Source: Ranitomeya imitator (Eukaryota). Taken from it: DNA of 64,000 nt. Positions 1-63,268 of the stretch are shown here, in pieces. The stretch is from positions 192,324,001-192,388,000 of the forward strand of contig NC_091285.1 of the NCBI RefSeq assembly GCF_032444005.1, read 5' to 3'. The notes under the pieces were generated by a model. The model ran no database searches. It saw nothing but the letters and a program-made list of their open reading frames with translations, and was not told where the DNA came from. The translations under genes and the position numbers were made by a program. Position 1 is the first letter of the stretch, and each line of letters begins with the position of its first letter.

Positions 1-1546
1 TAATTAATATTGTATATTCACTGTAGATAAATGAGAGCAGACATTGTAATAACTTATACATGATCAAATATTTTCACTTTTGAGAAAAAAATACTTTCAT
101 CATTTTTACATCCTTTGGTTTTGACCCACATGATTAATACTTAAGCGTATGGAGAAATACCGGAGCAATATACATGATCTCCGGCGTTGTTTGTAGTAGC
201 GGCTGCAGAGGTAATGGATATTTTATAAGAGGAGACAGGTGAAGATAACAGGAGGGAACTCTACAGGCTATACAATGGGCCTGCTGCAGAGAGAACAAGG
301 CATCTTGGAATACGCACGCTCCTCAGACAATGAAGGGACCGCTTCCAGCTTAGCTTATAAATAGCAACAGCTGAGAAAATGAGGCCACAGCTTATACCGC
401 CAGGATGAGAAAAAACCACTGGCGGAAGGCGGCATGCCGAGCTGGAGAATGATTGGACGGAATAAGTGTACCCCCCTCACCCAAGGTCTCCTTTTGATCC
501 TATAAATCCCTCTGTTCACATGACCCACAGACAAATATGAGTGGCCCTCTCCCCTGTTCTTGCAGATTACACTCAGAATCCAGGCTCGTTCCCCAGTTTA
601 CGCTGCTTAAATCTACTGATTTGTTTTACCTGATGTATTATTTTTTTCGTCTGCAGAGGCGTAGCGCGGCGCCGTGACTCGCAGCAGCCTGGCTTTGTGG
701 GAAGATTACGCTCTCTGTAAATGGAGCACGTAACATTAAACTAATTATTATATTTATTTCATATGCGTAGCACAGATACAAGGAAGGTCTTTTATTTGGT
801 TAATAACATAACCTTAATGAAGACAAAAGATCACAGCGAGAGGTTAAATTATATCACTCCCCAGTAAGATAAAAGACCTGTTATTAAATGGAAATGATGA
901 ATGGCTTTGGTCCATATTTCCGACTGTATGTCTAAGGGTATCTCCACATACATATTCATGTCCATCTAGCAGCGTGATTTCTTCTTATAATATGCCAACA
1001 AAATTGATCTGGTGACTCTGATTGATGGGTAAAGTTAGCCGATCTCATTGCCTAGGTAATTGAAGGCGGCACACACTTCCACGCTTGCTAAATCATTCAG
1101 GTTTCTGCATTGACAGCTTGGCTTGGTTGCAGACTCTTCACTCCATGGCTTCTTTAAGAGACAGGGAATGAACCTACATTTGCCTGTACAATGCTGCTAC
1201 AAAGGTGTCCAAGCTGTGGAAACTCAACCTTTAGTAGATCCAATATAGTGCCTACAGCTTCATTAACAGACAATGACTCAGACTTTTGACTGGTACACCC
1301 CATTTCCAGCACCATTAGGATCCAAGAAGTATCGTTTCTCCTTGTGGAGAGTGACATGTTAAACATGTCGAGGTGAGGAGACTTAAAGCCGCAATGCTCC
1401 TCTTGGAAATATGCAAATTGTCTCTTCAGAGAGGAAGAGGACTAGAACTCTAGTGCCACCTATTGGAAGTAGCGATCTTAACAGTCAGTCAACCCTTTAA
1501 CGAGCCATGTCACATGACTTGGGATAAGAGCCAACCAGATCTCAGT

Positions 1547-1589
1547 TTGCAGACACTGTGTTTCATGGTACTGCCCCTCGTCAGTGCAA
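1547..1589 (-). ncRNA. Minimal type I hammerhead ribozyme motif
   Basis: Minus strand reads UUGCA-CUGACGA-GGGG cagua CCAU-GAAA-CAC a GUG-UC-UGCAA. Helix I is UUGCA/UGCAA, the conserved core is CUGANGA...GAAA, and the GUC cleavage triplet predicts a cut between 1552 and 1551. Helix II has one mismatch and one wobble. Confidence 0.85.
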
Positions 1590-1813
1590 CGTGGAGATCT
1601 GGTTTGGCTGATTGAGAGGCGTCTGATCGGGATCCAAGAAGTATAATTTCTCCTTGCTGAGAGCGACATGGTAAGCATGTCGAGGTGAAGAGACTTAAAG
1701 CCGCAATGCTCCTCGTGGAAATATGCAAATTGTCTCTTCAGAGAGGAAGAGGTCTAGAACTCTAGTGCCACCTATTGGAAGTAGCAATCCTAACAGTCAA
1801 TGTCAACTCTTTA

Positions 1814-1847
1814 ACGAGGGGCAGTACACCGAAACAGTGTCTGCAAA
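1814..1847 (+). ncRNA. 5'-truncated second copy of the same hammerhead
   Basis: ACGA-GGGG cagua CACC-GAAA-CAGUG-UC-UGCAAA. The helix I 5' strand and CUG are lost at the inversion junction, which falls in a shared ACGAG. Confidence 0.7.
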
Positions 1848-2332
1848 TAGAGATCTGGTTGGCTTTTATCCAAGTCATGTGACAAGGCTCGTTAAAGGGT
1901 CGACATTGACTGTTAGGATCGCTACTTCCAATAGGTGGCACTAGAGTTCTAGTCCTCTTCCTCTCTGAAGAGACAATCTGCACCATTAGTAATACTGATG
2001 AAACCTTTCCATCTCCTCCATGATGACTGTCAAGACACAGGCAAATACCAGCAAATCCGCTTGGTACATGACAGAATTATTCACTTTTCCTGATTGCATT
2101 GTTCACTTTTTCTTCATGTGAGTTATTCATCATGTGTTCTTCAATGGTCTTTTCTATTGGCTCATTGTAATTTTAAGTATGAGGTCTGACCAATCAATAT
2201 ATACTATGGTCACACAATTGGTCCCTTAGACTTTAGATCCTAGGTGCGACTGAAATCCTTACACCCACTATAGATACGTTCCTGGGAGTCACTCTAAAGA
2301 TGATGCTATGGGTGACTGTTGGGACTATGTCA

Positions 2333-19377: not shown

Positions 19378-20580
19378 TATTATTATTATTATTATTATTA
19401 TTTATTTATATAGCACCATTGATTCCATGGTGCTGTACATGAGAAGGGGTTACATACAAGTTACAAATATCACATACAGTAAACAAACTAACAATGACGG
19501 ACTGATACAGAGGGGCGAGGACCCTGCCCTTGCGGGCTTACATTCTACAGGATTATGGGGAAGGAGACAGTAGGTTGAGGGTTGCAGGAGCTCCGGTGTT
19601 GGTGAGGCGGTAGCTCCGGTGTTGGTGAGGCGGTAGCTCCGGTGTTGGTGAGGCGGTAGCTTTGTTGGTGATGAGGCAGCAGCGGTGTCAGTGCAGGCTG
19701 TAGGCTTTCCTGAAGAGATGAGTTTTCAGGTTCCGTCTGAAGGATCCGACTGTGGTTGATAGTCGGACGTGTTGGGGCAGAGAGTTCCAGAGGATGGGGG
19801 ATATTCGGGAGAAGTCTTGGAGGCGATTGGATGAGGAGCGGATAAGTGTGGAGGAGAGAAGGAGGTCTTGGGAGGACCGGAGGTCACGTGAGGGAAGATA
19901 TCGAGAGATTAGTTCAGAGATATATGGAGGAGACAGGTTGTGGATGGCTTTGTAGGTCAGTATTAGCAATTTGAACTGGATACGCTGAGGGAATGGGAGC
20001 CAGTGAAGAGATTTGCAGAGGGGGGAAGCGGAGGAGTAGCGAGGAGAGAGATGGATTAGTCGGGCAGCAGAGTTAAGGATGGACTGGAGAGGTGCAAGGG
20101 TGTTAGCAGGGAGGCCACAGAAAAGGATGTTGCAGTAGTCAAGGCGGGAAATGATGAGGGCGTGCACAAGCATTTTAGTAGATTGGGGGTTGAGGAAAGG
20201 ACGGATCCTGGAGATATTTTTGAGCTGGAGGCGACAGGAGGTGGAAAGAGCTTGGATGTGTGGTTTGAAGGACAGGGCAGAGTCGAAGGTTACTCCGAGG
20301 CAGCGGACTTCGGGTACAGGGGAAAGCATGATGTCATTGACTGCGATAGATAGGTCAAGTAAGGAAGATTTGTGGGATGGAGGAAAGATGATGAGTTCAG
20401 ATTTGTCCACATTGAGTTTGAGGAAGCGAGAGGAGAAGGAGGATATGGCTGATAGGCACTCTGGGATTCTGGACAGCAGAGCGGTGACGTCTGGGCCAGA
20501 GAGGTAGATCTGAGTGTCGTCAGCATAGAGGTGGTACTGGAATCCATGGGACTTTATGAGTTGTCCCAAGCCAAGTGTAT
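19378..20580 (-). mobile_element. 5'-truncated L2-clade LINE (RT C-terminus, 3' UTR, (TAA)n tail)
   Basis: ORF 19688-20593 has [24 protein letters not shown] and SRLDYCN; (TAA)n tail at about 19378-19410; 21-bp tandem repeat in the 3' UTR. Confidence 0.92.
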
Positions 20581-20847
20581 ATATCACAGCCAATCTCTAG
20601 TCAGACCTACTAGTATTATTTTGTATGCCTAAGAGACTAGCTAACTATATGTTTACTATACTGTGCACACAATTAGTAGACAATTAGTATTTTTGATTAT
20701 TAATTTTATTATGGAACAACTACAGCTATGTCAGTCACCCCTAAAGGTTGATAAACCTGAAACCTAAATATTTAAGAAAGTAAAAGTGAGGTTTTATCTT
20801 TCTTCAAGCAATATCTGTGTGCATATTTATTGGACAATTATTAATGT

Positions 20848-21155
20848 GCAGAATTATTATGCAACTAAGAGAAAAACGTAAATCTTTTCACCTCAATTCT
20901 TTATTTTCATTTGTTCAAGTGAAAATAATAACTGTAAACAACTCAAAGCAGACATAAGCCTTCCATCCATTGGGTCTGTCAGTTTCTTATTCTGGTGACG
21001 ATCAACTTTTGGGCAGCACCCACCACAGCCTCCCAGACACAGTTCAGAGGTGTACTCTTTCCTTTACCATAAATCTCTCGTTTGGGAAGGGCCCATAAGT
21101 TCTCAATAGGGTTTAGGTCAGGTGAGGAAGGAGCCATGTCATTGTTCTTTCATTT
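20848..21155 (-). pseudogene. Tc1 transposase 3' fragment with TIR remnant
   Basis: Reverse translation gives [15 protein letters not shown]; abuts the hammerhead-family copy at 21158. Confidence 0.75.
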
Positions 21156-21157
21156 TT

Positions 21158-21426
21158 GGGGTCTAAGGGGTATTGTTTCTCCTTATGGAGAGTGACATAC
21201 CATCTCTGGCTTGTCAAGGTAAGGAGGCTTATTCGCCGTGCAATGCTCCTCTGGGAAATATAATATGCAAATTGCCTCTTCTGAGAAAAAGAGGACTTAA
21301 ACTCTATAGCGCCACCTGTTGGAAGTAGCGATCCTACACGTCACAATCAACCCTTTAACGAGTCTTGCAATAGGACTTAGGATAAAAGCCAAATCAGTAT
21401 CTCAATTCGCAGACACGGTGAAACAC
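21158..21426 (-). mobile_element. Diverged single-unit copy of the 312-bp hammerhead repeat family
   Basis: Colinear with 1318-1560: TTTCTCCTTATGGAGAGTGAC, GCAATGCTCCTC, ATGCAAAT, GCCACCTGTTGGAAGTAGCGATC, CCCTTTAACGAG, GCAGACACGGTG. It stops inside hammerhead helix III. Confidence 0.8.
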
Positions 21427-21973: not shown

Positions 21974-22063
21974 CCTGAAGAAGAAGGCCAGGAAGCGATG
22001 GAAGAACCTGCTGCTGAACCACTGCTGGAGCCAGAAGGGGAGAGCTACGAGGAAGCCCCCCAG
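21974..22063 (+). CDS. sncb: Beta-synuclein, penultimate coding exon (PEEEGQEAMEEPAAEPLLEPEGESYEEAPQ)
   Basis: Pyrimidine tract and TTTCTAG acceptor before 21974; CAG|GTGACA donor after 22063. 90 nt, phase 0/0. 22 of 30 residues match human SNCB PEEVAQEAAEEPLIEPLMEPEGESYEDPPQ (recalled sequence). Confidence 0.95.
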
Positions 22064-37309: not shown

Positions 37310-38940
<1,631 letters not shown>

Positions 38941-42435: not shown

Positions 42436-42468
42436 GATGATTACCAGGAATATGAGCCAGAAGCATAA
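42436..42468 (+). CDS. sncb: Beta-synuclein, last coding exon (DDYQEYEPEA-stop)
   Basis: CTACTTTACAG acceptor, then GAT GAT TAC CAG GAA TAT GAG CCA GAA GCA TAA. In phase with the 21974 exon; matches the SNCB terminus EEYQEYEPEA at 8 of 10 residues. Confidence 0.95.
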   Translation, partial: DDYQEYEPEA

Positions 42469-49446: not shown

Positions 49447-51058
49447 CAGGTCCTTCTCAAAAAATTAGCATATAGTGTTAAATTTCATTATTTACCATAA
49501 TGTAATGATTACAATTAAACTTTCATATATTATAGATTCATTATCCACCAACTGAAATTTGTCAGGTCTTTTATTGTTTTAATACTGACGATTTTGGCAT
49601 ACAACTCCTGATAACCCAAAAAACCTGTCTCAATAAATTAGCATATCAAGAAAAGGTTCTCTAAACGACCTATTACCCTAATCTTCTGAATCAACTAATT
49701 AACTCTAAACACATGCAAAAGATACCTGAGGCTTTTATAAACTCCCTGCCTGGTTCATTACTCAAAACCCCCATCATGGGTAACACTAGCGACCTGACAG
49801 ATGTCAAGAAGGCCATCATTGACACCCTCAAGCAAGAGGGTAAGACCCAGAAAGAAATTTCTCAACAAATAGGCTGTTCCCAGAGTGCTGTATCAAGGCA
49901 CCTCAATGGTAAGTCTGTTGGAAGGAAACAATGTGGCAGAAAACGCTGTACAACGAGAAGAGGAGACCGGACCCTGAGGAAGATTGTGGAGAAGGACCGA
50001 TTCCAGACCTTGGGGAACCTGAGGAAGCAGTGGACTGAGTCTTGTGTGGAAACATCCAGAGCCACCGTGCACAGGCGTGTGCAGGAAATGGGCTACAGGT
50101 GCCGCATTCCCCAGGTAAAGCCACTTTTGAACCATAAACAGCGGCAGAGGCGCCTGACCTGGGCTACAGAGAAGCAGCACTGGACTGTTGCTAAGTGGTC
50201 CCAAGTACTTTTTTCTGATGAAAGCAAATTTTGCATGTCATTCGGAAATCAAGGTGCCAGAGTCTGGAGGAAGACTGGGGAGAAGGAAATGCCAAAATGC
50301 CTGAAGTCCAATGTCAAGTACCCACAGTCAGTGATGGTGTGGGGTGCCATGTCAGCTGCTGGTGTTGGTCCACTGTGTTTCATCAAGGGCAGGGTCAATG
50401 CAGCTAGCTATCAGGAGATTTTGGAGCACTTCATGCTTCCATCGGCTGAAATGCTTTATGGAGATGAAGATTTCATTTTTCAGCACGACCTGGCACCTGC
50501 TCACAGTGCCAAAACCACTGGTAAATGGTTTACTGACCATGGTATTACTGTGCTCAATTGGCCTGCCAACTCTCCTGACCTGAACCCCATAGAGAATCTG
50601 TGGGATATTGTGAAGAGAAAGTTGAGAGACGCAAGACCCAACACTCTGGATGAGCTTAAGGCCGCTATTGAAGCATCCTGGGCCTCCATAACATCTCAGC
50701 AGTGTCACAGGCTGATTGCCTCCATGCCACGCCGCATTGAAGCAGTCATTTCTGCCAAAGGATTCCCGACCAAGTATTGAGTGCATAACTGAACATTATT
50801 ATTTGATGGTTTTTTTGTTTGTTATTAAAAAACACTTTTATTTGATTGGATGGGTGAAATATGCTAATTTATTGAGACAGGTTTTTTGGGTTATCAGGAG
50901 TTGTATGCCAAAATCATCAGTATTAAAACAATAAAAGACCTGACAAATTTCAGTTGGTGGATAACGAATCTATAATATATGAAAGTTTAATTGTAATCAT
51001 TACATTATGGTAAATAATGAAATTTAACACTATATGCTAATTTTTTGAGAAGGACCTG
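49447..51058 (+). mobile_element. Full-length Tc1 transposon (1612 bp, IR/DR type)
   Basis: TA|CAGGTCCTTCTCAAAAAATTAGCATAT ... ATATGCTAATTTTTTGAGAAGGACCTG|TA. TIRs ~200 bp with only two mismatches seen. Confidence 0.96.
49776..50780 (+). CDS. Intact-looking Tc1 DD34E transposase (334 aa from MGNTSDL)
   Basis: Paired-like HTH, GRK motif, FSDESKF, FQHDLAPAH and NSPDLNPIE with D-34-E spacing; no stops or frameshifts. Confidence 0.92.
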   Translation: MGNTSDLTDVKKAIIDTLKQEGKTQKEISQQIGCSQSAVSRHLNGKSVGRKQCGRKRCTTRRGDRTLRKIVEKDRFQTLGNLRKQWTESCVETSRATVHRRVQEMGYRCRIPQVKPLLNHKQRQRRLTWATEKQHWTVAKWSQVLFSDESKFCMSFGNQGARVWRKTGEKEMPKCLKSNVKYPQSVMVWGAMSAAGVGPLCFIKGRVNAASYQEILEHFMLPSAEMLYGDEDFIFQHDLAPAHSAKTTGKWFTDHGITVLNWPANSPDLNPIENLWDIVKRKLRDARPNTLDELKAAIEASWASITSQQCHRLIASMPRRIEAVISAKGFPTKY

Positions 51059-51745: not shown

Positions 51746-51788
51746 CACTCCCTGACGAAGGAGTATATCCGAAACGCGCATCGGGGTG
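51746..51788 (+). ncRNA. Minimal type I hammerhead ribozyme motif (probably one inactivating substitution)
   Basis: CACUCC-CUGACGA-A-GGA guaua UCC-GAAA-CGCGCA-UC-GGGGUG. Helix I is CACUCC/GGGGUG. Helix III would be the palindrome ACGCGCGU if 51780 were G. Confidence 0.78.
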
Positions 51789-53634: not shown

Positions 53635-54909
53635 TTGTCGCGGGATGTGCGTGCTTTTGTGCAGTCCTGTGGGGCTTGCGCCCGGGCCAAGCCTAGCTGT
53701 TCCCGCGCTAGTGGGTTGCTTTTGCCTTTGCTGGCCCCTGAGAGGCCCTGGACTCACATTTCCATGGATTTTATTTCGGATCTTCCTGTTTCCCAGAAGA
53801 TGTCTGTTATCTGGGTTGTTTGTGACCGGTTCTCTAAAATGGTCCATCTGGTACCTTTGCCTAAGTTACCTTCCTCCTCAGATTTGGTTCCATTGTTTTT
53901 TCAGCATGTGGTTTGTTTGCATGGCATTCCGGAGAATATTGTGTCTGACAGAGGTTCTCCGTTTGTCTCTAGGTTTTGGCGGGCCTTTTGTGCTAGGATG
54001 GGCATTGATTTGTCTTTTTCTTCGGCGTTTCATCCTCAGACTAATGGCCAAACTGAGCGAACTAATCAGACCTTGGAAACCTATTTGAGATGCTTTGTGT
54101 CTGCTGATCAGGATGATTGGGTGGCTTTCCTGCCGTTGGCCGAGTTTGCCCTTAATAATAGGGCTAGTTCGGCTACTTTGGTTTCACCTTTCTTTTGTAA
54201 TTTTGGTTTTCAGCCTCGTTTTTCTTCGGGGCAGGTTGAGCCTTCTGATTGTCCTGGTGTGGATTCTGTGGTGGACAGGCTGCAGCAGATTTGGACTCAT
54301 GTGGTGGACAATTTGACGTTGTCTCAGGAAAAGGCTCAACGTTTTGCTAACCGCCGTCGGTGTGTTGGTCCCCGGCTTCGTGTGGGGGATTTGGTTTGGT
54401 TGTCTTCTCGTCATGTTCCTATGAAGGTTTCTTCCCCTAAGTTTAAGCCTCGGTTTATTGGTCCTTATAAGATTTCTGATATTATCAATCCGCTGTCTTT
54501 TCGTTTGGCTCTTCCAGCCTCTTTTGCCATTCATAATGTTTTCCATAGATCTTTGTTGCGGAGATATGTGGTGCCCGTTGTTCCCTCGGTTGATCCTCCG
54601 GCCCCGGTGTTGGTTGAGGGAGAGTTGGAATATGAGGTTGAGAAATTTTTGGATTCTCGTTTTTCGAGGCGGAGGCTTCAGTATCTTGTCAAGTGGAAGG
54701 GTTATGGCCAGGAGGATAATTCTTGGGTTGTTGCCTCCGATGTCCATGCCGCCGATTTGGTTCGTGCTTTTCACTTGGCTCGTCCTGATCAGCCTGGGAG
54801 TTCTGGTGAGGGTTCGGTGACCCCTCCTCAAGGGGAGGGTACTGTTGTGAATTCCGCTCTTGGGCTCCCTCCGGTGGTTTTAAGTGGAATGGCTGCTCCT
54901 TGGATTTAG
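53635..54909 (+). CDS. Gypsy integrase core, GPY/F motif and chromodomain (remnant of pol)
   Basis: CGAC (half of HHCC), SMDF, VSDRG, GQTER, RFIGPYKI and YEVEKFLDSR...YLVKWKGY...NSW. The ORF has no ATG start. Confidence 0.9.
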   Translation: MSRDVRAFVQSCGACARAKPSCSRASGLLLPLLAPERPWTHISMDFISDLPVSQKMSVIWVVCDRFSKMVHLVPLPKLPSSSDLVPLFFQHVVCLHGIPENIVSDRGSPFVSRFWRAFCARMGIDLSFSSAFHPQTNGQTERTNQTLETYLRCFVSADQDDWVAFLPLAEFALNNRASSATLVSPFFCNFGFQPRFSSGQVEPSDCPGVDSVVDRLQQIWTHVVDNLTLSQEKAQRFANRRRCVGPRLRVGDLVWLSSRHVPMKVSSPKFKPRFIGPYKISDIINPLSFRLALPASFAIHNVFHRSLLRRYVVPVVPSVDPPAPVLVEGELEYEVEKFLDSRFSRRRLQYLVKWKGYGQEDNSWVVASDVHAADLVRAFHLARPDQPGSSGEGSVTPPQGEGTVVNSALGLPPVVLSGMAAPWI

Positions 54910-58223: not shown

Positions 58224-60311
58224 CTAGGTGTCGGCCGGGCAAGGTGGGGCAAAAGAATTCGAAATCCAGTTGTGGTTCATTTTAATAAAGGTTAGATCAT
58301 CAACATTTTGGGTAGCCAGACGAGTCCTTTTTTCGGTTAATATTGAACCTGCAGCACTGAATACTCTTTCGGATAGGACACTAGCTGCCGGGCAAGCAAG
58401 CTCCTGCAATGCATATTCTGCCAATTCTGGCCAGGTGTCTAATTTGGATGCCCAGTTATCAAATGGGAATGATGGTTGAGGTAGAACATCGATAAGGGAT
58501 GAAAAATAGTTAGTAACCATACTGGACAAATGTTGTCTCCTGTCACTTTGAATTGATGCAGCAGTACCTGTCCTGTCTGCGGTCATAGCAAAATCACTCC
58601 ACAACCTGGTCAGAAAACCCCTCTGTCCAACGCCACTTCGGATTTCTGCACCTCTAACACTTCTGGTCTGCTGCCCCCTGCTGCTCGTGTGAGAACGATC
58701 ACGGGCGCTGTGTGCTGGGAATGCCTGAAGCAAACGGTCAACAAGAGTTGATTGTTTGGTTGCTAATATTAGTTCCAAGTTGTCATGTGGCATAATATTT
58801 TGCAATTTGCCTTTATAGCGAGGATCAAGGAGGCAGGTCAACCAGTAATCGTCATCGTTCATCATTTTCGTAATGCGTGTGTCCCTTTTGAGGATACGTA
58901 AGGCATAATCCGCCATGTGTGCCAAAGTTCCAGTTGTCAAATCTGCGGTTGTGCTTGGTTGAGGGGCAGTTTCAGGCAAATCTACATCACTTGTGTCCCT
59001 CAGAAACCCAGAACCCGGCCTTGCCACGCCACCAATTTCCAGTGGCCCCGGAGAAGCTTCCTCATTAAAAAAATACTCATCCCCATCATCCTCCTCATCC
59101 TCCTCCTCCTGTTCGCCCGCTACCTCGTCCTGTACACTGCCCTGACCAGACAATGGCTGACTGTCATCAAGGCTTTCCTCTTCCTCGGCTGCAGACGCCT
59201 GATCCTTTATGTGCGTCAAACTTTGCATCAGCAGACGCATTAGGGGGATGCTCATGCTTATTATGGTGTTGTCTGCACTAACCAGCCGTGTGCATTCCTC
59301 AAAACACTGAAGGACTTGACACATGTCTTGTATCTTCGACCACTGCACACCTGACAACTCCATGTCTGCCATCCTACTTCCTGCCCGTGTATGTGTATCC
59401 TCCCACAAAAACATAACAGCCAGCCTCTGTTCGCACAGTCTCTGAAGCATGTGCAGTGTTGAGTTCCACCTTGTTGCAACGTCTATGATTAGGCGATGCT
59501 GGGGAAGGTTCAAAGACCGCTGATAGGTCTGCATACGGCTGGAGTGTACGGGCGAACGGCGGATATGTGAGCAAAGTCCGCGCACTTTGAGGAGCAGGTC
59601 GGATAACCCCGGATAACTTTTCAGGAAGCACTGCACCACCTGGTTTAAGGTGTGAGCCAGGCAAGGAATGTGTTTCAGTTGGGAAAGGGAGATGGCAGCC
59701 ATGAAATTCCTTCCGTTATCACTCACTACCTTGCCTGCCTCAAGATCTACTGTGCCCAGCCACGACTGCGTTTCTCTCTGCAAGAACTCGGACAGAACTT
59801 CCGCGGTGTGTCTGTTGTCGCCCAAACACTTCATAGCCAATACAGCCTGCTGACGCTTGCCAGTAGCTGCCCCATAATGGGACAACTGGTGTGCAACAGT
59901 GCCAGCTGCGGATGGAGTGGTTTGGCGACTGCGGTCTGTGGACGAGCTCTCGCTTCTGCAGAAGGACGAAGAGGAGGAGGAGGGGGTGCGAACACCTACA
60001 GCCAACTGTTTCCTAGACCGTGGGCTAGGCAGAACTGTCCCGAAATTGATGTCCCCTGTGGACCCTGCATCCACCACATTCACCCAGTGTGCCATGATGG
60101 ACACGTAACGTCCCTGGCCATGCCTACTGGTCCATGCATCTGTTGTCAGGTGCACCTTTGTACTCACAGATTGCCTGAGTGCATGGACGATGCGCTCTTT
60201 AACATGCTGGTGGAGCAAATCTCCCACTGATTTTTTTTTTAATGTTTTCAGGGAGACTTTAGAAACCAAATTAAAAAAAATGATTTTTTTCAGGGAGAAT
60301 TTAGAAACCAA
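58224..60311 (-). CDS. hAT transposase core and C-terminal dimerisation domain, lacking the N-terminal BED finger
   Basis: LTTDAWTS, VSDNG, CLAH, TRWNST, SVLSERVFS and RTRL..NVDDLTFIKMN. The first ~30 aa are read-through of repeat DNA. Confidence 0.88.
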   Translation of the reverse strand: MVSKFSLKKIIFFNLVSKVSLKTLKKKSVGDLLHQHVKERIVHALRQSVSTKVHLTTDAWTSRHGQGRYVSIMAHWVNVVDAGSTGDINFGTVLPSPRSRKQLAVGVRTPSSSSSSFCRSESSSTDRSRQTTPSAAGTVAHQLSHYGAATGKRQQAVLAMKCLGDNRHTAEVLSEFLQRETQSWLGTVDLEAGKVVSDNGRNFMAAISLSQLKHIPCLAHTLNQVVQCFLKSYPGLSDLLLKVRGLCSHIRRSPVHSSRMQTYQRSLNLPQHRLIIDVATRWNSTLHMLQRLCEQRLAVMFLWEDTHTRAGSRMADMELSGVQWSKIQDMCQVLQCFEECTRLVSADNTIISMSIPLMRLLMQSLTHIKDQASAAEEEESLDDSQPLSGQGSVQDEVAGEQEEEDEEDDGDEYFFNEEASPGPLEIGGVARPGSGFLRDTSDVDLPETAPQPSTTADLTTGTLAHMADYALRILKRDTRITKMMNDDDYWLTCLLDPRYKGKLQNIMPHDNLELILATKQSTLVDRLLQAFPAHSARDRSHTSSRGQQTRSVRGAEIRSGVGQRGFLTRLWSDFAMTADRTGTAASIQSDRRQHLSSMVTNYFSSLIDVLPQPSFPFDNWASKLDTWPELAEYALQELACPAASVLSERVFSAAGSILTEKRTRLATQNVDDLTFIKMNHNWISNSFAPPCPADT

Positions 60312-62293: not shown

Positions 62294-63268
62294 GGGTGGT
62301 TTCACACTTGCGTTTTTGTCTGCAGCGTTTTTTTTTTAAAAAATGCATGCGTTTTTTTCCCCCTATATTTAACATTGAAAACACATGCTTTTTTTGTGTA
62401 CGCGTTTTGGTCGCGTTTTGTGACGCATGCGTTTTTTTACTGCATGCGTTCATTTTCTGAAATGCTACTTGTAGTATTTTTAGAAGCATTTTTTGGACCA
62501 AAAAAAACGCATGCGTTTTCATGCTTTTTTTGGGGTCAAAAAATACATTGGAGTGAATGGGGACGCATGCGTTTTTTGGTGCATGCGTTTTCTGCGGTAA
62601 AAAACGCATGCGTTTTTTTATTAAAAAACCAGAAAACACACTGATATGCCACCCCCCAACATAAAGGTGATAAAGGGAACCTAACCCTACCCCTAACCCT
62701 ACCCCTAACCCTAAGGGATCCTAACCCTAACCCTACCCCTAACCCTAACCCTAAGGGATCCTAACCCTAACCCTAATCCCTTTATGGTTAGGGTTAGGGG
62801 TAGGGTTAGTGTTAGGGTTAGGGTTAGGATCCCTTAGGGTTAGGGGTAGGGTTAGGGGTAGGGTTAGGATCCCTTAGGGGTAGGGTTAGGGGTAGGATTA
62901 GGGTTAGGATCCCATAGGGTTAGGGGTAGGGTTAGGGGTAGGATCCCTTTAGGGTTAGGGTTATGATCCCTACCCCTAACCCTACCCCTACCCCTAACCC
63001 TAACTATTTCTGTTTATAGTGGGTTTTTTACTTTATTTTGATGATTGGCAGCTGTCACACATTTCTCAGCATGCGTTTAAAAAACGCAAACGCATGTAAA
63101 AACGCATGTAAACGCGTCAAAACGCCGCGTTTTTTTCACCACATGCAAAAACGCATGCGTCAAAAAACGCAGCGTTTACACGCGTTTACATGCGTTTTTT
63201 CACCATGCATTTTTTTGCGTTTTTTACCGCAAAAACGCACCCCAAAAAACGCCAATGTGAAACCAGCC
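62294..63268. mobile_element. Harbinger MITE carrying telomere-like repeats
   Basis: TTA|GGGTGGTTTCACA ... TGTGAAACCAGCC|TTA; CCCTAA/TTAGGG variant arrays at 62680-63003. Confidence 0.88.

What the first reader, a model, noticed from the sequence alone, without database searches (positions are those of the whole stretch)
1319..1979. Frog retrozyme / satellite-2-like element: 312-bp tandem unit with a hammerhead ribozyme, sitting in an sncb intron
Seen: a non-coding 312-bp unit repeated 1.6 times. The minus strand carries a complete type I hammerhead (UUGCA CUGACGA GGGGcaguaCCAU GAAA CACaGUG UC UGCAA; GUC site cut at 1552/1551). There is a 10-bp TSD-like repeat (GCACCATTAG) and a related copy 20 kb away. 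Known: tandem ~170-400-nt units with minimal type I hammerheads are the architecture of metazoan non-LTR retrozymes and newt satellite 2, which self-cleave into monomers that can circularise; short near-palindromic helix III motifs cleave as dimers. Inference: this is a mobile, possibly circRNA-forming ribozyme family in an anuran, whose template was an uncleaved multimer. I cannot tell whether this family is already catalogued.
Basis: partly seen in the sequence, partly recalled or inferred. Interest (0 to 1): 0.88.

Follow-up and report, generated by a model that had tools for sequence, protein, structure and literature searches.

The report
Decayed frog hammerhead retrozyme insertion
This is an old, worn copy of a very abundant frog mobile element of an already described kind (a non-coding "retrozyme" with a self-cleaving hammerhead RNA motif), pasted in as tandem plus inverted pieces; it is real, but ordinary for this genome.

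Summary
Positions 1319-1979 are a 661-bp non-coding insertion between exact 10-bp direct repeats (1309-1318, 1980-1989).

The minus strand carries all core nucleotides of a type I hammerhead, cut site 1552/1551. Rfam Hammerhead_1 aligns end to end only on a narrow search and below threshold (18.1 vs 34 bits). In this copy the two core-proximal pairs of helix II are spoiled.

Public frog DNA runs give about 19,000 contigs of the family each. Their majority letters restore a GGGG/CCCC helix II and a sixth helix I pair, so the family carries a canonical minimal hammerhead.

The layout (common 3' end, 5' truncation, partial tandem, inverted 5'-truncated copy, target duplication) matches Penelope-like-element integration. 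Frog retrozymes are published, and this scan already holds 117 retrozyme notes on this genome, on other DNA (384- and 352/353-bp families).

This copy has one damaged ribozyme and is most likely dead. It lies antisense, about 20 kb upstream of two sncb-like 3' exons; intron placement is plausible, not proven. Cleavage and circular RNA were not testable.

The parts
1309..1318 (.). Left copy of the 10-bp target-site duplication GCACCATTAG
   Evidence: It is exact, and the only 10-mer pair at 671-nt spacing in the window.
1319..1630 (-). Full 312-nt unit. The ribozyme-sense RNA is the minus strand, and its 3' end lies at 1319.
   Evidence: GC is 0.47 and no ORF exceeds 74 aa.
1546..1590 (-). Type I hammerhead motif with the cut between 1552 and 1551. 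Helix I is 1585-1589 with 1547-1551, the CUGACGA box is 1584-1578, helix II is 1577-1565, GAAA is 1564-1561, and the short near-palindromic helix III is 1560-1554. In this copy helix II begins with G.U and G.A.
   Evidence: descriptor. (Rfam RF00163, model 1-45/45, 18.1 bits, E=0.021). (family majority G at 1565 and 1566, A at 1590).
1529..1612 (-). Long hairpin that extends helix I beyond an internal loop. The hammerhead sits at its tip.
   Evidence: minimum free energy -32.3 kcal/mol, z-score -3.2 against shuffles. The same stem appears in the fold of the whole unit.
1631..1818 (-). Second, 5'-truncated tandem unit (unit positions 1-186). It stops before the hammerhead.
   Evidence: (92% over 188 nt).
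1814..1979 (+). Inverted, 5'-truncated copy of unit positions about 97-263. It is joined to unit 2 at the microhomology ACGAG (1814-1818). It carries a hammerhead remnant (about 1814-1850) that lacks helix I 5' strand and CUG of the core, and has a 2-nt deletion in helix III.
   Evidence: pairs I1-I5; 91%. One search shows AC 'put in behind 1833' in some family contigs.
1724..1982 (.). Fold-back made by unit 2 and the inverted copy: 95-nt arms, 95% complementary, 69 nt apart.
   Evidence: pair I1. A weak microRNA-precursor-like Rfam match reflects this hairpin only.
1980..1989 (.). Right copy of the target-site duplication. Its first letters GCA also match the unit, giving microhomology at the joint.
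21162..21420 (-). Older solo copy of the same family (76%, unit positions 3-242). It has the same 3' end as the main element and is 5'-truncated inside helix III, so it has no catalytic core.
21974..22063 (+). Context: penultimate coding exon of a beta-synuclein-like gene (peptide PEEEGQEAMEEPAAEPLLEPEGESYEEAPQ), with AG and GT splice signals.
   Evidence: Likeness to SNCB is from my own knowledge of the protein. Pfam and PDB searches of the 30-aa peptide gave nothing.
42436..42468 (+). Context: last coding exon of the same gene (DDYQEYEPEA, then stop), preceded by an AG acceptor.

Best explanation
The stretch is a dead, moderately old insertion of a very abundant frog non-LTR retrozyme family, that is, a non-autonomous relative of Penelope-like-element pseudo-LTRs.

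Likely life cycle of the family:
1. The family RNA is the window's minus strand.
2. Its minimal type I hammerhead has a short, near-palindromic helix III. It would cut multimeric transcripts at GUC, probably by pairing two motifs.
3. The RNA, as a multimer or a ligated circle, is copied into the genome by a Penelope-like reverse transcriptase/endonuclease acting in trans.

How this copy was made: cDNA synthesis started at the RNA's usual 3' end (1319) and ran over 1.6 units. A second, oppositely oriented cDNA was primed from the other side of the staggered target cut. The two were joined at a 5-nt microhomology, leaving a 10-bp target duplication.

Since then each piece has drifted by about 2.5-4%. 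The single complete ribozyme lost the two core-proximal helix II pairs and the sixth helix I pair.

What is shown: the structure, the duplication, the abundance of the family, the family-majority hammerhead and the tandem joints elsewhere. What is inferred: self-cleavage, dimer action, circle formation, the Penelope-like enzyme and the twin priming.
For: Structure and boundaries:
- Tandem plus inverted layout.
- Exact and unique 10-bp duplication, and no terminal inverted repeat (3/30 identical).
- The ACGAG microhomology at the inversion joint.
- No tRNA-like head and only short ORFs.

Hammerhead:
- All core letters and the cut site are present.
- Rfam Hammerhead_1 is the only hit on the narrow stretch and aligns over the full model. 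Rescaled to one family over the whole window, my arithmetic gives about 0.005 chance hits.

Family level:
- 18,778 and 19,876 contigs were laid from two DNA runs of two species.
- The majority letter is G at 1565 (86-88%) and G at 1566 (99%), and A at 1590 (99%).
- On the RNA these turn helix II into GGGG/CCCC with the canonical G10.1-C11.1 pair, and add a U-A pair to helix I.
- The inverted copy in the window itself keeps CC at the two core-proximal helix II positions.
- With the four majority letters the helix II hairpin appears in the minimum-energy fold (-37.1 vs -32.3 kcal/mol).
- 'Goes back' joints (1593>1317, 1638>1335, and 1620>1320 and 1623>1320 with a few inserted letters between) show head-to-tail arrays elsewhere in the genome.

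Retroposition signature:
- Both window copies end at unit position 1-3 and are truncated at the ribozyme-sense 5' side.
- In the region shared by all three pieces, every difference is private to one piece: one substitution and one 2-nt deletion, four substitutions, and two substitutions. So the pieces were alike when inserted.

Literature:
- Penelope-like insertions are typically 5'-truncated partial tandems, often with an inverted 5'-truncated copy at the 5' end (PMC8557442).
- Animal type I hammerhead repeats are non-LTR retrozymes with target duplications larger than 4 bp and GC below 50%. Amphibian motifs with a short helix III cleave as dimers (PMC7229834).
- All seven amphibian genomes sampled carry such retrozymes, with a mean consensus length of 316 bp, and Xenopus families are sisters of Penelope-like pseudo-LTRs (bioRxiv 10.64898/2026.07.22.740005).
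Against: - Rfam score is well below the gathering score, and the broad searches missed the motif.
- The relaxed motif alone is not rare by chance: 0.37 per window.
- Family evidence comes from assembled contigs at 80% likeness or more, not from a curated alignment. 59 difference rows were not shown, so conservation of every core position is not proven.
- No similarity to an autonomous Penelope-like element could be tested. The only other hammerhead-bearing remnant in the window (about 51.7 kb) is unrelated in sequence.
- The inverted piece ends at unit position about 94-97, not at the usual 3' end. No 30-40-bp 'tail' is evident.
- The runs guessed to be RNA hold family contigs, but contigs cannot show cleavage ends or circles.
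Confidence: 0.75

Rival explanations
1. The unit is a solo or partial pseudo-LTR of an autonomous Penelope-like element, left by 5' truncation, and not a separate non-autonomous retrozyme family.
For: The insertion anatomy is the Penelope-like one. Xenopus retrozyme families are sisters of pseudo-LTRs, and 24 of 57 match known Penelope-like termini. A Penelope-like remnant with its own hammerhead lies in the same window.
Against: Contigs from other copies join unit end to unit start, so full units are repeated head to tail. No reverse-transcriptase ORF adjoins either window copy. The ORF at 19688-20593 is a LINE-type RT tail and 20979-21137 is a Tc1-type transposase fragment. The abundance, about 19,000 contigs per run, suits a short non-autonomous element.
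Confidence: 0.13
2. This locus is itself an active retrozyme that yields self-cleaved, circular RNAs of about 312 nt.
For: All core nucleotides, a 5-bp helix I and a long helix I extension are intact. G.U at 10.1/11.1 might be partly tolerated.
Against: There is only one complete hammerhead at the locus, and a monomer needs two cuts. Published screens call a locus active only with two consecutive complete motifs. Helix II has G.U and G.A next to the core, and in this copy it barely forms in the minimum-energy fold (only two of its pairs; the centroid fold has none). The pieces have drifted 2.5-4% since insertion. The ribozyme strand is antisense to the host gene, and no promoter is known.
Confidence: 0.05
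3. An ordinary satellite, SINE or fold-back DNA transposon in which a hammerhead-like string occurs by chance.
For: The relaxed descriptor has 0.37 chance matches per window. The Rfam match is sub-threshold. The element holds a 95-nt fold-back.
Against: Majority letters of thousands of copies restore exactly the helix pairs that this copy lacks. There are no terminal inverted repeats and no tRNA-like head. The copies share a 3' end and are 5'-truncated. A second family in the same window and many in the same genome carry type I hammerheads.
Confidence: 0.05

Closest known systems
Metazoan non-LTR retrozymes (Cervera and de la Pena 2020, PMC7229834), including the amphibian and Xenopus families of Li, Clavereau and Pollet 2026 (bioRxiv 10.64898/2026.07.22.740005)
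   Same: Non-coding unit of about 300 nt (the amphibian mean is 316 bp). Head-to-tail copies. Type I hammerhead in each full unit. GC below 50%. Target duplication longer than 4 bp. Very high copy number.
   Different: This locus has only 1.6 direct units with one complete and damaged ribozyme, plus an inverted piece. By the published rule of two consecutive complete motifs it is not an 'active' retrozyme. It probably lies in an intron, where Xenopus retrozymes are reported to be depleted. Whether this 312-nt family is in their catalogue could not be checked.
Newt/salamander satellite 2 and axolotl HHR_Amex repeats
   Same: Repeats of 330-350 bp, with a type I hammerhead whose weak helix III makes dimers the efficient form.
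   Different: This is an anuran family with no sequence relation tested. Helix III here is ACAC-A-GUGU (3 bp plus triloop, or 4+4 bp in a dimer), not a single pair capped by a palindromic tetraloop. The copies are dispersed, duplication-bounded insertions rather than long satellite arrays.
Penelope-like element insertions (pseudo-LTR partial tandems with an inverted 5'-truncated copy; Craig et al. 2021, PMC8557442; Cervera and de la Pena 2014, PMC4209133)
   Same: 5' truncation, partial tandem, an inverted 5'-truncated copy at the 5' end, a target duplication, and a minimal type I hammerhead in the repeated part.
   Different: No RT/GIY-YIG ORF and no recognisable 30-40-bp tail. The inverted piece ends at an internal unit position (about 94-97), not at the usual 3' end.
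L1 twin-priming inversions (from my own knowledge)
   Same: An inverted 5' segment joined to a direct 3' segment at microhomology, inside one target duplication.
   Different: No poly(A). The template is multimeric or circular. A different enzyme family is presumed.

Membership tests
Type I hammerhead ribozyme | Conserved core C3-U4-G5-A6-N7-G8-A9, G12-A13-A14, A15.1-U16.1, and a non-G at the cut site (H17) | tested here: met
   CUGACGA, GAAA, and GUC with C17 at 1552 on the minus strand.
Type I hammerhead ribozyme | Open helix I formed by the 5' and 3' ends | tested here: met
   UUGCA/UGCAA gives 5 bp, or 6 bp with the family-majority letter at 1590. A further stem of at least 9 bp follows an internal loop.
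Type I hammerhead ribozyme | Helix II closed by G10.1-C11.1 | tested here: not met
   This copy has G.U, then G.A. The feature is met in the family majority (G at 1565/1566 on the + strand) and in the inverted remnant.
Type I hammerhead ribozyme | Reaches the Rfam RF00163 gathering score | tested here: not met
   18.1 bits against 34. Full-length alignment, E=0.021 on 71 bases. No hit in broader searches.
Type I hammerhead ribozyme | Self-cleavage at the predicted site | not testable with these tools
   Only assembled contigs were available, and they cannot show RNA ends.
Metazoan non-LTR retrozyme | Non-coding tandem units of about 170-400 bp, with no LTR/PBS/PPT | tested here: met
   312-nt spacing and 1.6 direct units here. 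Head-to-tail joints in other copies. ORFs of 74 aa or less.
Metazoan non-LTR retrozyme | [quoted passage not shown] | tested here: not met
   There is one complete motif. Unit 2 ends at unit position 186 and the inverted copy lacks the 5' part of the core.
Metazoan non-LTR retrozyme | Target duplication longer than 4 bp and GC below 50% | tested here: met
   10-bp exact duplication; GC 0.46-0.47.
Metazoan non-LTR retrozyme | Accumulates as small circular RNA | not testable with these tools
   Runs guessed to be RNA hold family contigs on both strands, but no raw reads were served.
Penelope-like-element-type insertion | 5' truncation, partial tandem, and an inverted 5'-truncated copy at the 5' end | tested here: met
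   In ribozyme sense the order is: inverted truncated copy, truncated unit, full unit.
Penelope-like-element-type insertion | 30-40-bp tail at one end | tested here: inconclusive
   No extra sequence lies between the unit-derived DNA and the duplication. The literature says the tail is 'often', not always, present.
Penelope-like-element-type insertion | Sequence kinship with the pseudo-LTR of an autonomous element encoding RT and GIY-YIG | not tested
   No repeat library or genome was at hand. The window's other hammerhead-bearing remnant is unrelated by blastn.

The most novel reading that the evidence does not exclude
The 312-nt family may be a separate, still-active and dominant retrozyme lineage of this frog group, with a rough size of 10^4 copies or more, shared by at least two species. 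Its copies end again and again at two fixed unit positions (1-3 and about 92-97). That would point to two preferred priming sites on a circular or multimeric RNA, so fossil copies like this one would record twin priming by a Penelope-like enzyme.
Probability: 0.3. Interest if true: 0.4.

Novelty: new member of a known kind. Interest (0 to 1): 0.25.

Why it matters
Little on its own. It adds one more retrozyme family (312-nt unit) to a genome where this scan has already logged many, and the class is published for amphibians.

Modest value lies in three points:
1. The copy is a clean, duplication-bounded example of the tandem-plus-inverted layout with microhomology at the joints. That layout bears on the still undefined integration mechanism of Penelope-like elements.
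2. It shows that broad Rfam scans miss these minimal hammerheads, while narrow scans and family-majority letters recover them.
3. It places a 95-nt fold-back inside a probable sncb intron.

Tried and rejected
- Tandem Repeats Finder did not report the 312-bp repeat. The repeat finder and blastn did.
- Rfam at gathering score on the whole window, and at E<=10 on 901 bases, gave no hammerhead. Only a 71-base search did. The weak microRNA-precursor, Whalefall-1 and Xist matches reflect hairpins or chance and were dropped.
- My strict hammerhead descriptor found nothing in the window.
- A 25-nt pattern of the family-majority core plus helix II, searched in the metagenome and viral collections, returned no frog DNA. 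It found one high-GC bacterial contig and nothing viral, so no real family members could be aligned and no covariation test was possible.
- Both run searches found no holder on record as RNA and no raw reads. The laid contigs therefore say nothing on RNA ends, strand or circles. 'Opposite strands' joints such as 1539>1872 were set aside as piecewise alignment of family members to the two inverted arms.
- Summed contig depth would suggest tens of thousands of copies. The tool warns that it is no copy number, so I give only an order of magnitude.
- DNA transposon/MITE reading rejected: no terminal inverted repeats.
- SINE reading rejected: no tRNA-like part, and no A-rich or simple-repeat tail.
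- A link between the 21-kb copy and the nearby RT ORF (19688-20593) was rejected. That ORF is a LINE-type RT tail, and a Tc1-type transposase fragment lies between them.
- Pfam and PDB searches of the 30-aa sncb-like exon found nothing. The gene assignment rests on my recall of the SNCB C-terminus.
- A look-up of earlier findings by sequence was blank.
Full report
**What is in the sequence**

Positions 1319-1979 are bounded by an exact 10-bp direct repeat, GCACCATTAG, at 1309-1318 and 1980-1989. It is the only 10-mer pair at that spacing in the 64-kb window.

The insertion has three pieces:
- a full 312-nt unit (1319-1630);
- a second, direct copy of unit positions 1-186 (1631-1818; 92-93% alike);

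Unit 2 and the inverted piece form a fold-back with 95-nt arms that are 95% complementary. They meet at the letters ACGAG, which belong both to the unit (…TTTAACGAG…) and to the CUGACGAGG box of the ribozyme. That is a 5-nt microhomology joint.

Other checks on the element:
- Its two ends are not inverted repeats of each other (3/30 identical).
- It has no tRNA-like part.
- Its ORFs are 74 aa or shorter.
- Its GC content is 0.46.
- Tandem Repeats Finder did not list the repeat.

**The hammerhead**

On the minus strand, 1589 to 1547 reads: helix I strand UUGCA, CUGACGA, a 13-nt helix II segment, GAAA, CACAGUG, UC, then UGCAA.

Helix I continues beyond a small internal loop into a stem of at least 9 bp. 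The motif therefore sits at the tip of a long hairpin (z-score -3.2 against shuffles).

Helix III is short and near-palindromic. It gives 3 bp plus a triloop within one molecule, or 4+4 bp around an A.A mismatch between two motifs (-8.4 kcal/mol).

In this copy helix II begins with G.U and G.A. For that reason:
- a strict descriptor missed the motif;
- the relaxed descriptor that finds it is expected 0.37 times per window by chance;
- Rfam found nothing at gathering score or at E<=10 on 901 bases.

On a 71-base stretch the only Rfam hit was Hammerhead_1 (RF00163), aligned over all 45 model positions: 18.1 bits against a gathering score of 34, E=0.021. By my own arithmetic, rescaling that E-value to one family over the whole window gives about 0.005 expected chance hits. 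The motif is therefore better than chance, but weak on its own.

**Family evidence**

I laid the contigs of four public runs on 1200-2100 at 80% likeness or more. This placed 18,778 and 19,876 contigs from two DNA runs of two species, and 1,073 and 255 contigs from two small runs guessed to be RNA. One contig of organism B matches the left flank and the element's start (1200-1343) without any difference, so that species is probably the source of the window.

Where unit 1 departs from the family inside the ribozyme, the majority letters are nearly unanimous in all four runs:
- G at 1565 (86-88% in the DNA runs);
- G at 1566 (99%);
- A at 1590 (99%);
- A at 1545 (96%).

On the RNA strand the first two turn helix II into GGGG-loop-CCCC with the canonical G10.1-C11.1 pair. 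The third adds a sixth U-A pair to helix I. The fourth lies in the internal loop.

The inverted remnant in the window independently keeps CC at the two core-proximal helix II positions. With the four majority letters, the helix II hairpin appears in the minimum-energy fold (-37.1 vs -32.3 kcal/mol).

Contigs from other copies join unit end to unit start (1593>1317 and 1638>1335; 1620>1320 and 1623>1320 with a few inserted letters between). Head-to-tail arrays therefore exist elsewhere in the genome.

The family carries a canonical minimal type I hammerhead, and the window copy is a damaged member.

Two limits apply. These are assembled contigs, and 59 difference rows were not shown. I could not fetch real family members to test covariation.

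**Which strand moved, and how**

Both copies in the window end at unit position 1-3 and are shortened at the other side. The 21-kb copy (21162-21420, 76% alike) stops inside helix III and lacks the catalytic core. A common 3' end with 5' truncation, read in ribozyme sense, is the signature of retroposition of the ribozyme-sense RNA.

Read in that sense, the main insertion is: inverted 5'-truncated copy, then 5'-truncated unit, then full unit. This is the arrangement described as typical for Penelope-like elements: partial tandems, often with an inverted 5'-truncated copy adjacent at the 5' end (PMC8557442).

Both outer ends of the insertion are RNA-sense 3' ends. That fits priming of cDNA from both sides of a staggered target cut. 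The right joint shares GCA with the target. Many other copies also begin at 1409/1410 next to unrelated flanks (loose ends), close to where the inverted piece ends. These mechanistic steps are inference.

In the 93 nt shared by all three pieces, every difference is private to one piece: one substitution and one 2-nt deletion, four substitutions, and two substitutions. The pieces were therefore alike when inserted and have since drifted by about 2.5-4% each. This is an old insertion from near-identical template units, either a multimer or a circle copied round. The data cannot tell which.

**Function of this copy**

It is most likely dead:
- It has one complete hammerhead, and that one has a damaged helix II. 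Release of a monomer needs two cuts, and published screens require two consecutive complete motifs to call a locus active.
- The complete motif is antisense to the host gene.
- The sense-strand remnant lacks the 5' part of the core.

**Context**

On the + strand there is an exon at 21974-22063 with AG and GT signals. It encodes PEEEGQEAMEEPAAEPLLEPEGESYEEAPQ. A last exon at 42436-42468 encodes DDYQEYEPEA followed by a stop. From my knowledge of SNCB, these are the two C-terminal coding exons of beta-synuclein. Pfam and PDB searches of the short peptide gave nothing.

No KTKEGV-repeat exon lies in the window. The element is therefore 20 kb upstream of the penultimate exon. It probably lies in the preceding intron, but this is not proven.

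**Comparison with what is known**

- Animal type I hammerhead repeats are non-LTR retrozymes with low GC and target duplications larger than 4 bp. Amphibian motifs with a short helix III cleave as dimers (PMC7229834).
- A 2026 preprint found such retrozymes in all seven amphibian genomes sampled (mean consensus 316 bp) and 57 families in Xenopus, sisters of Penelope-like pseudo-LTRs and depleted from introns. Only one of nine tested dimers cleaved in vitro (bioRxiv 10.64898/2026.07.22.740005).
- This scan already holds 117 retrozyme notes on this genome. Followed-up 384-bp and 353-bp families, some with the same tandem-plus-inverted layout, were judged a known kind.

The present element is one more member, with a 312-nt unit. 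I could not check whether it is catalogued.

**Verdict**

The structure description was incomplete, this copy is inactive, and the kind is already known. Interest is low to moderate.

Noticed in passing
window 51746-51788 (+): A second, unrelated type I hammerhead motif (CACUCC CUGACGA ... GAAA CGCGCA UC GGGGUG). Rfam Hammerhead_1 gives a full-length alignment at 18.2 bits, E=0.024, on a narrow search. It lies in the region that another first-stage note (s1-288255) calls a Penelope-like pseudo-LTR. A Tc1-type transposase ORF (49713-50780) sits inside that region.
   Followed up: partly
L001 22-77 (+), metagenome contig Ga0075423_10225895: A high-GC bacterial contig carries what looks like a complete type III hammerhead. 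Its 25 nt of core plus helix II (CUGACGA-GGGGCAGUACCCC-GAAAC) are identical to the frog family's majority motif. Rfam Hammerhead_3 scores 31.2 bits, E=1.3e-5, below the gathering score of 48.5. The shared helix II is probably coincidence.
   Followed up: partly
window 1200-2100 (Rfam behaviour): Rfam scans of the whole window or of 901 bases missed both hammerheads, which a 71-86-base scan then found (vs 45, 50). Broad Rfam negatives in this genome should not be read as absence of minimal hammerheads.
   Followed up: yes
window 1479-1540 vs 1324-1478 and 1541-1633: Summed family depth is 30-50 times lower over 1479-1540 than over the flanking parts of the unit. Several hundred contigs start at 1409/1410 next to unrelated AT-rich DNA. 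The family seems modular or made of subfamilies, with a variable middle segment and a second recurrent terminus.
   Followed up: no
window 62673-63002: Interstitial telomere-like repeats in a head-to-head arrangement, (CCCTAA)n followed by (TTAGGG)n, each about 100-160 bp.
   Followed up: no
window 19688-20593 (-), 20979-21137 (-), 37528-38604 (-), 53635-54909 (+), 58224-60311 (-): Other transposon remnants: a LINE-type RT tail, Tc1/mariner transposases, a Ty3/gypsy-type integrase with chromodomain, and a hAT transposase. The sncb 3' region is densely packed with mobile elements.
   Followed up: no
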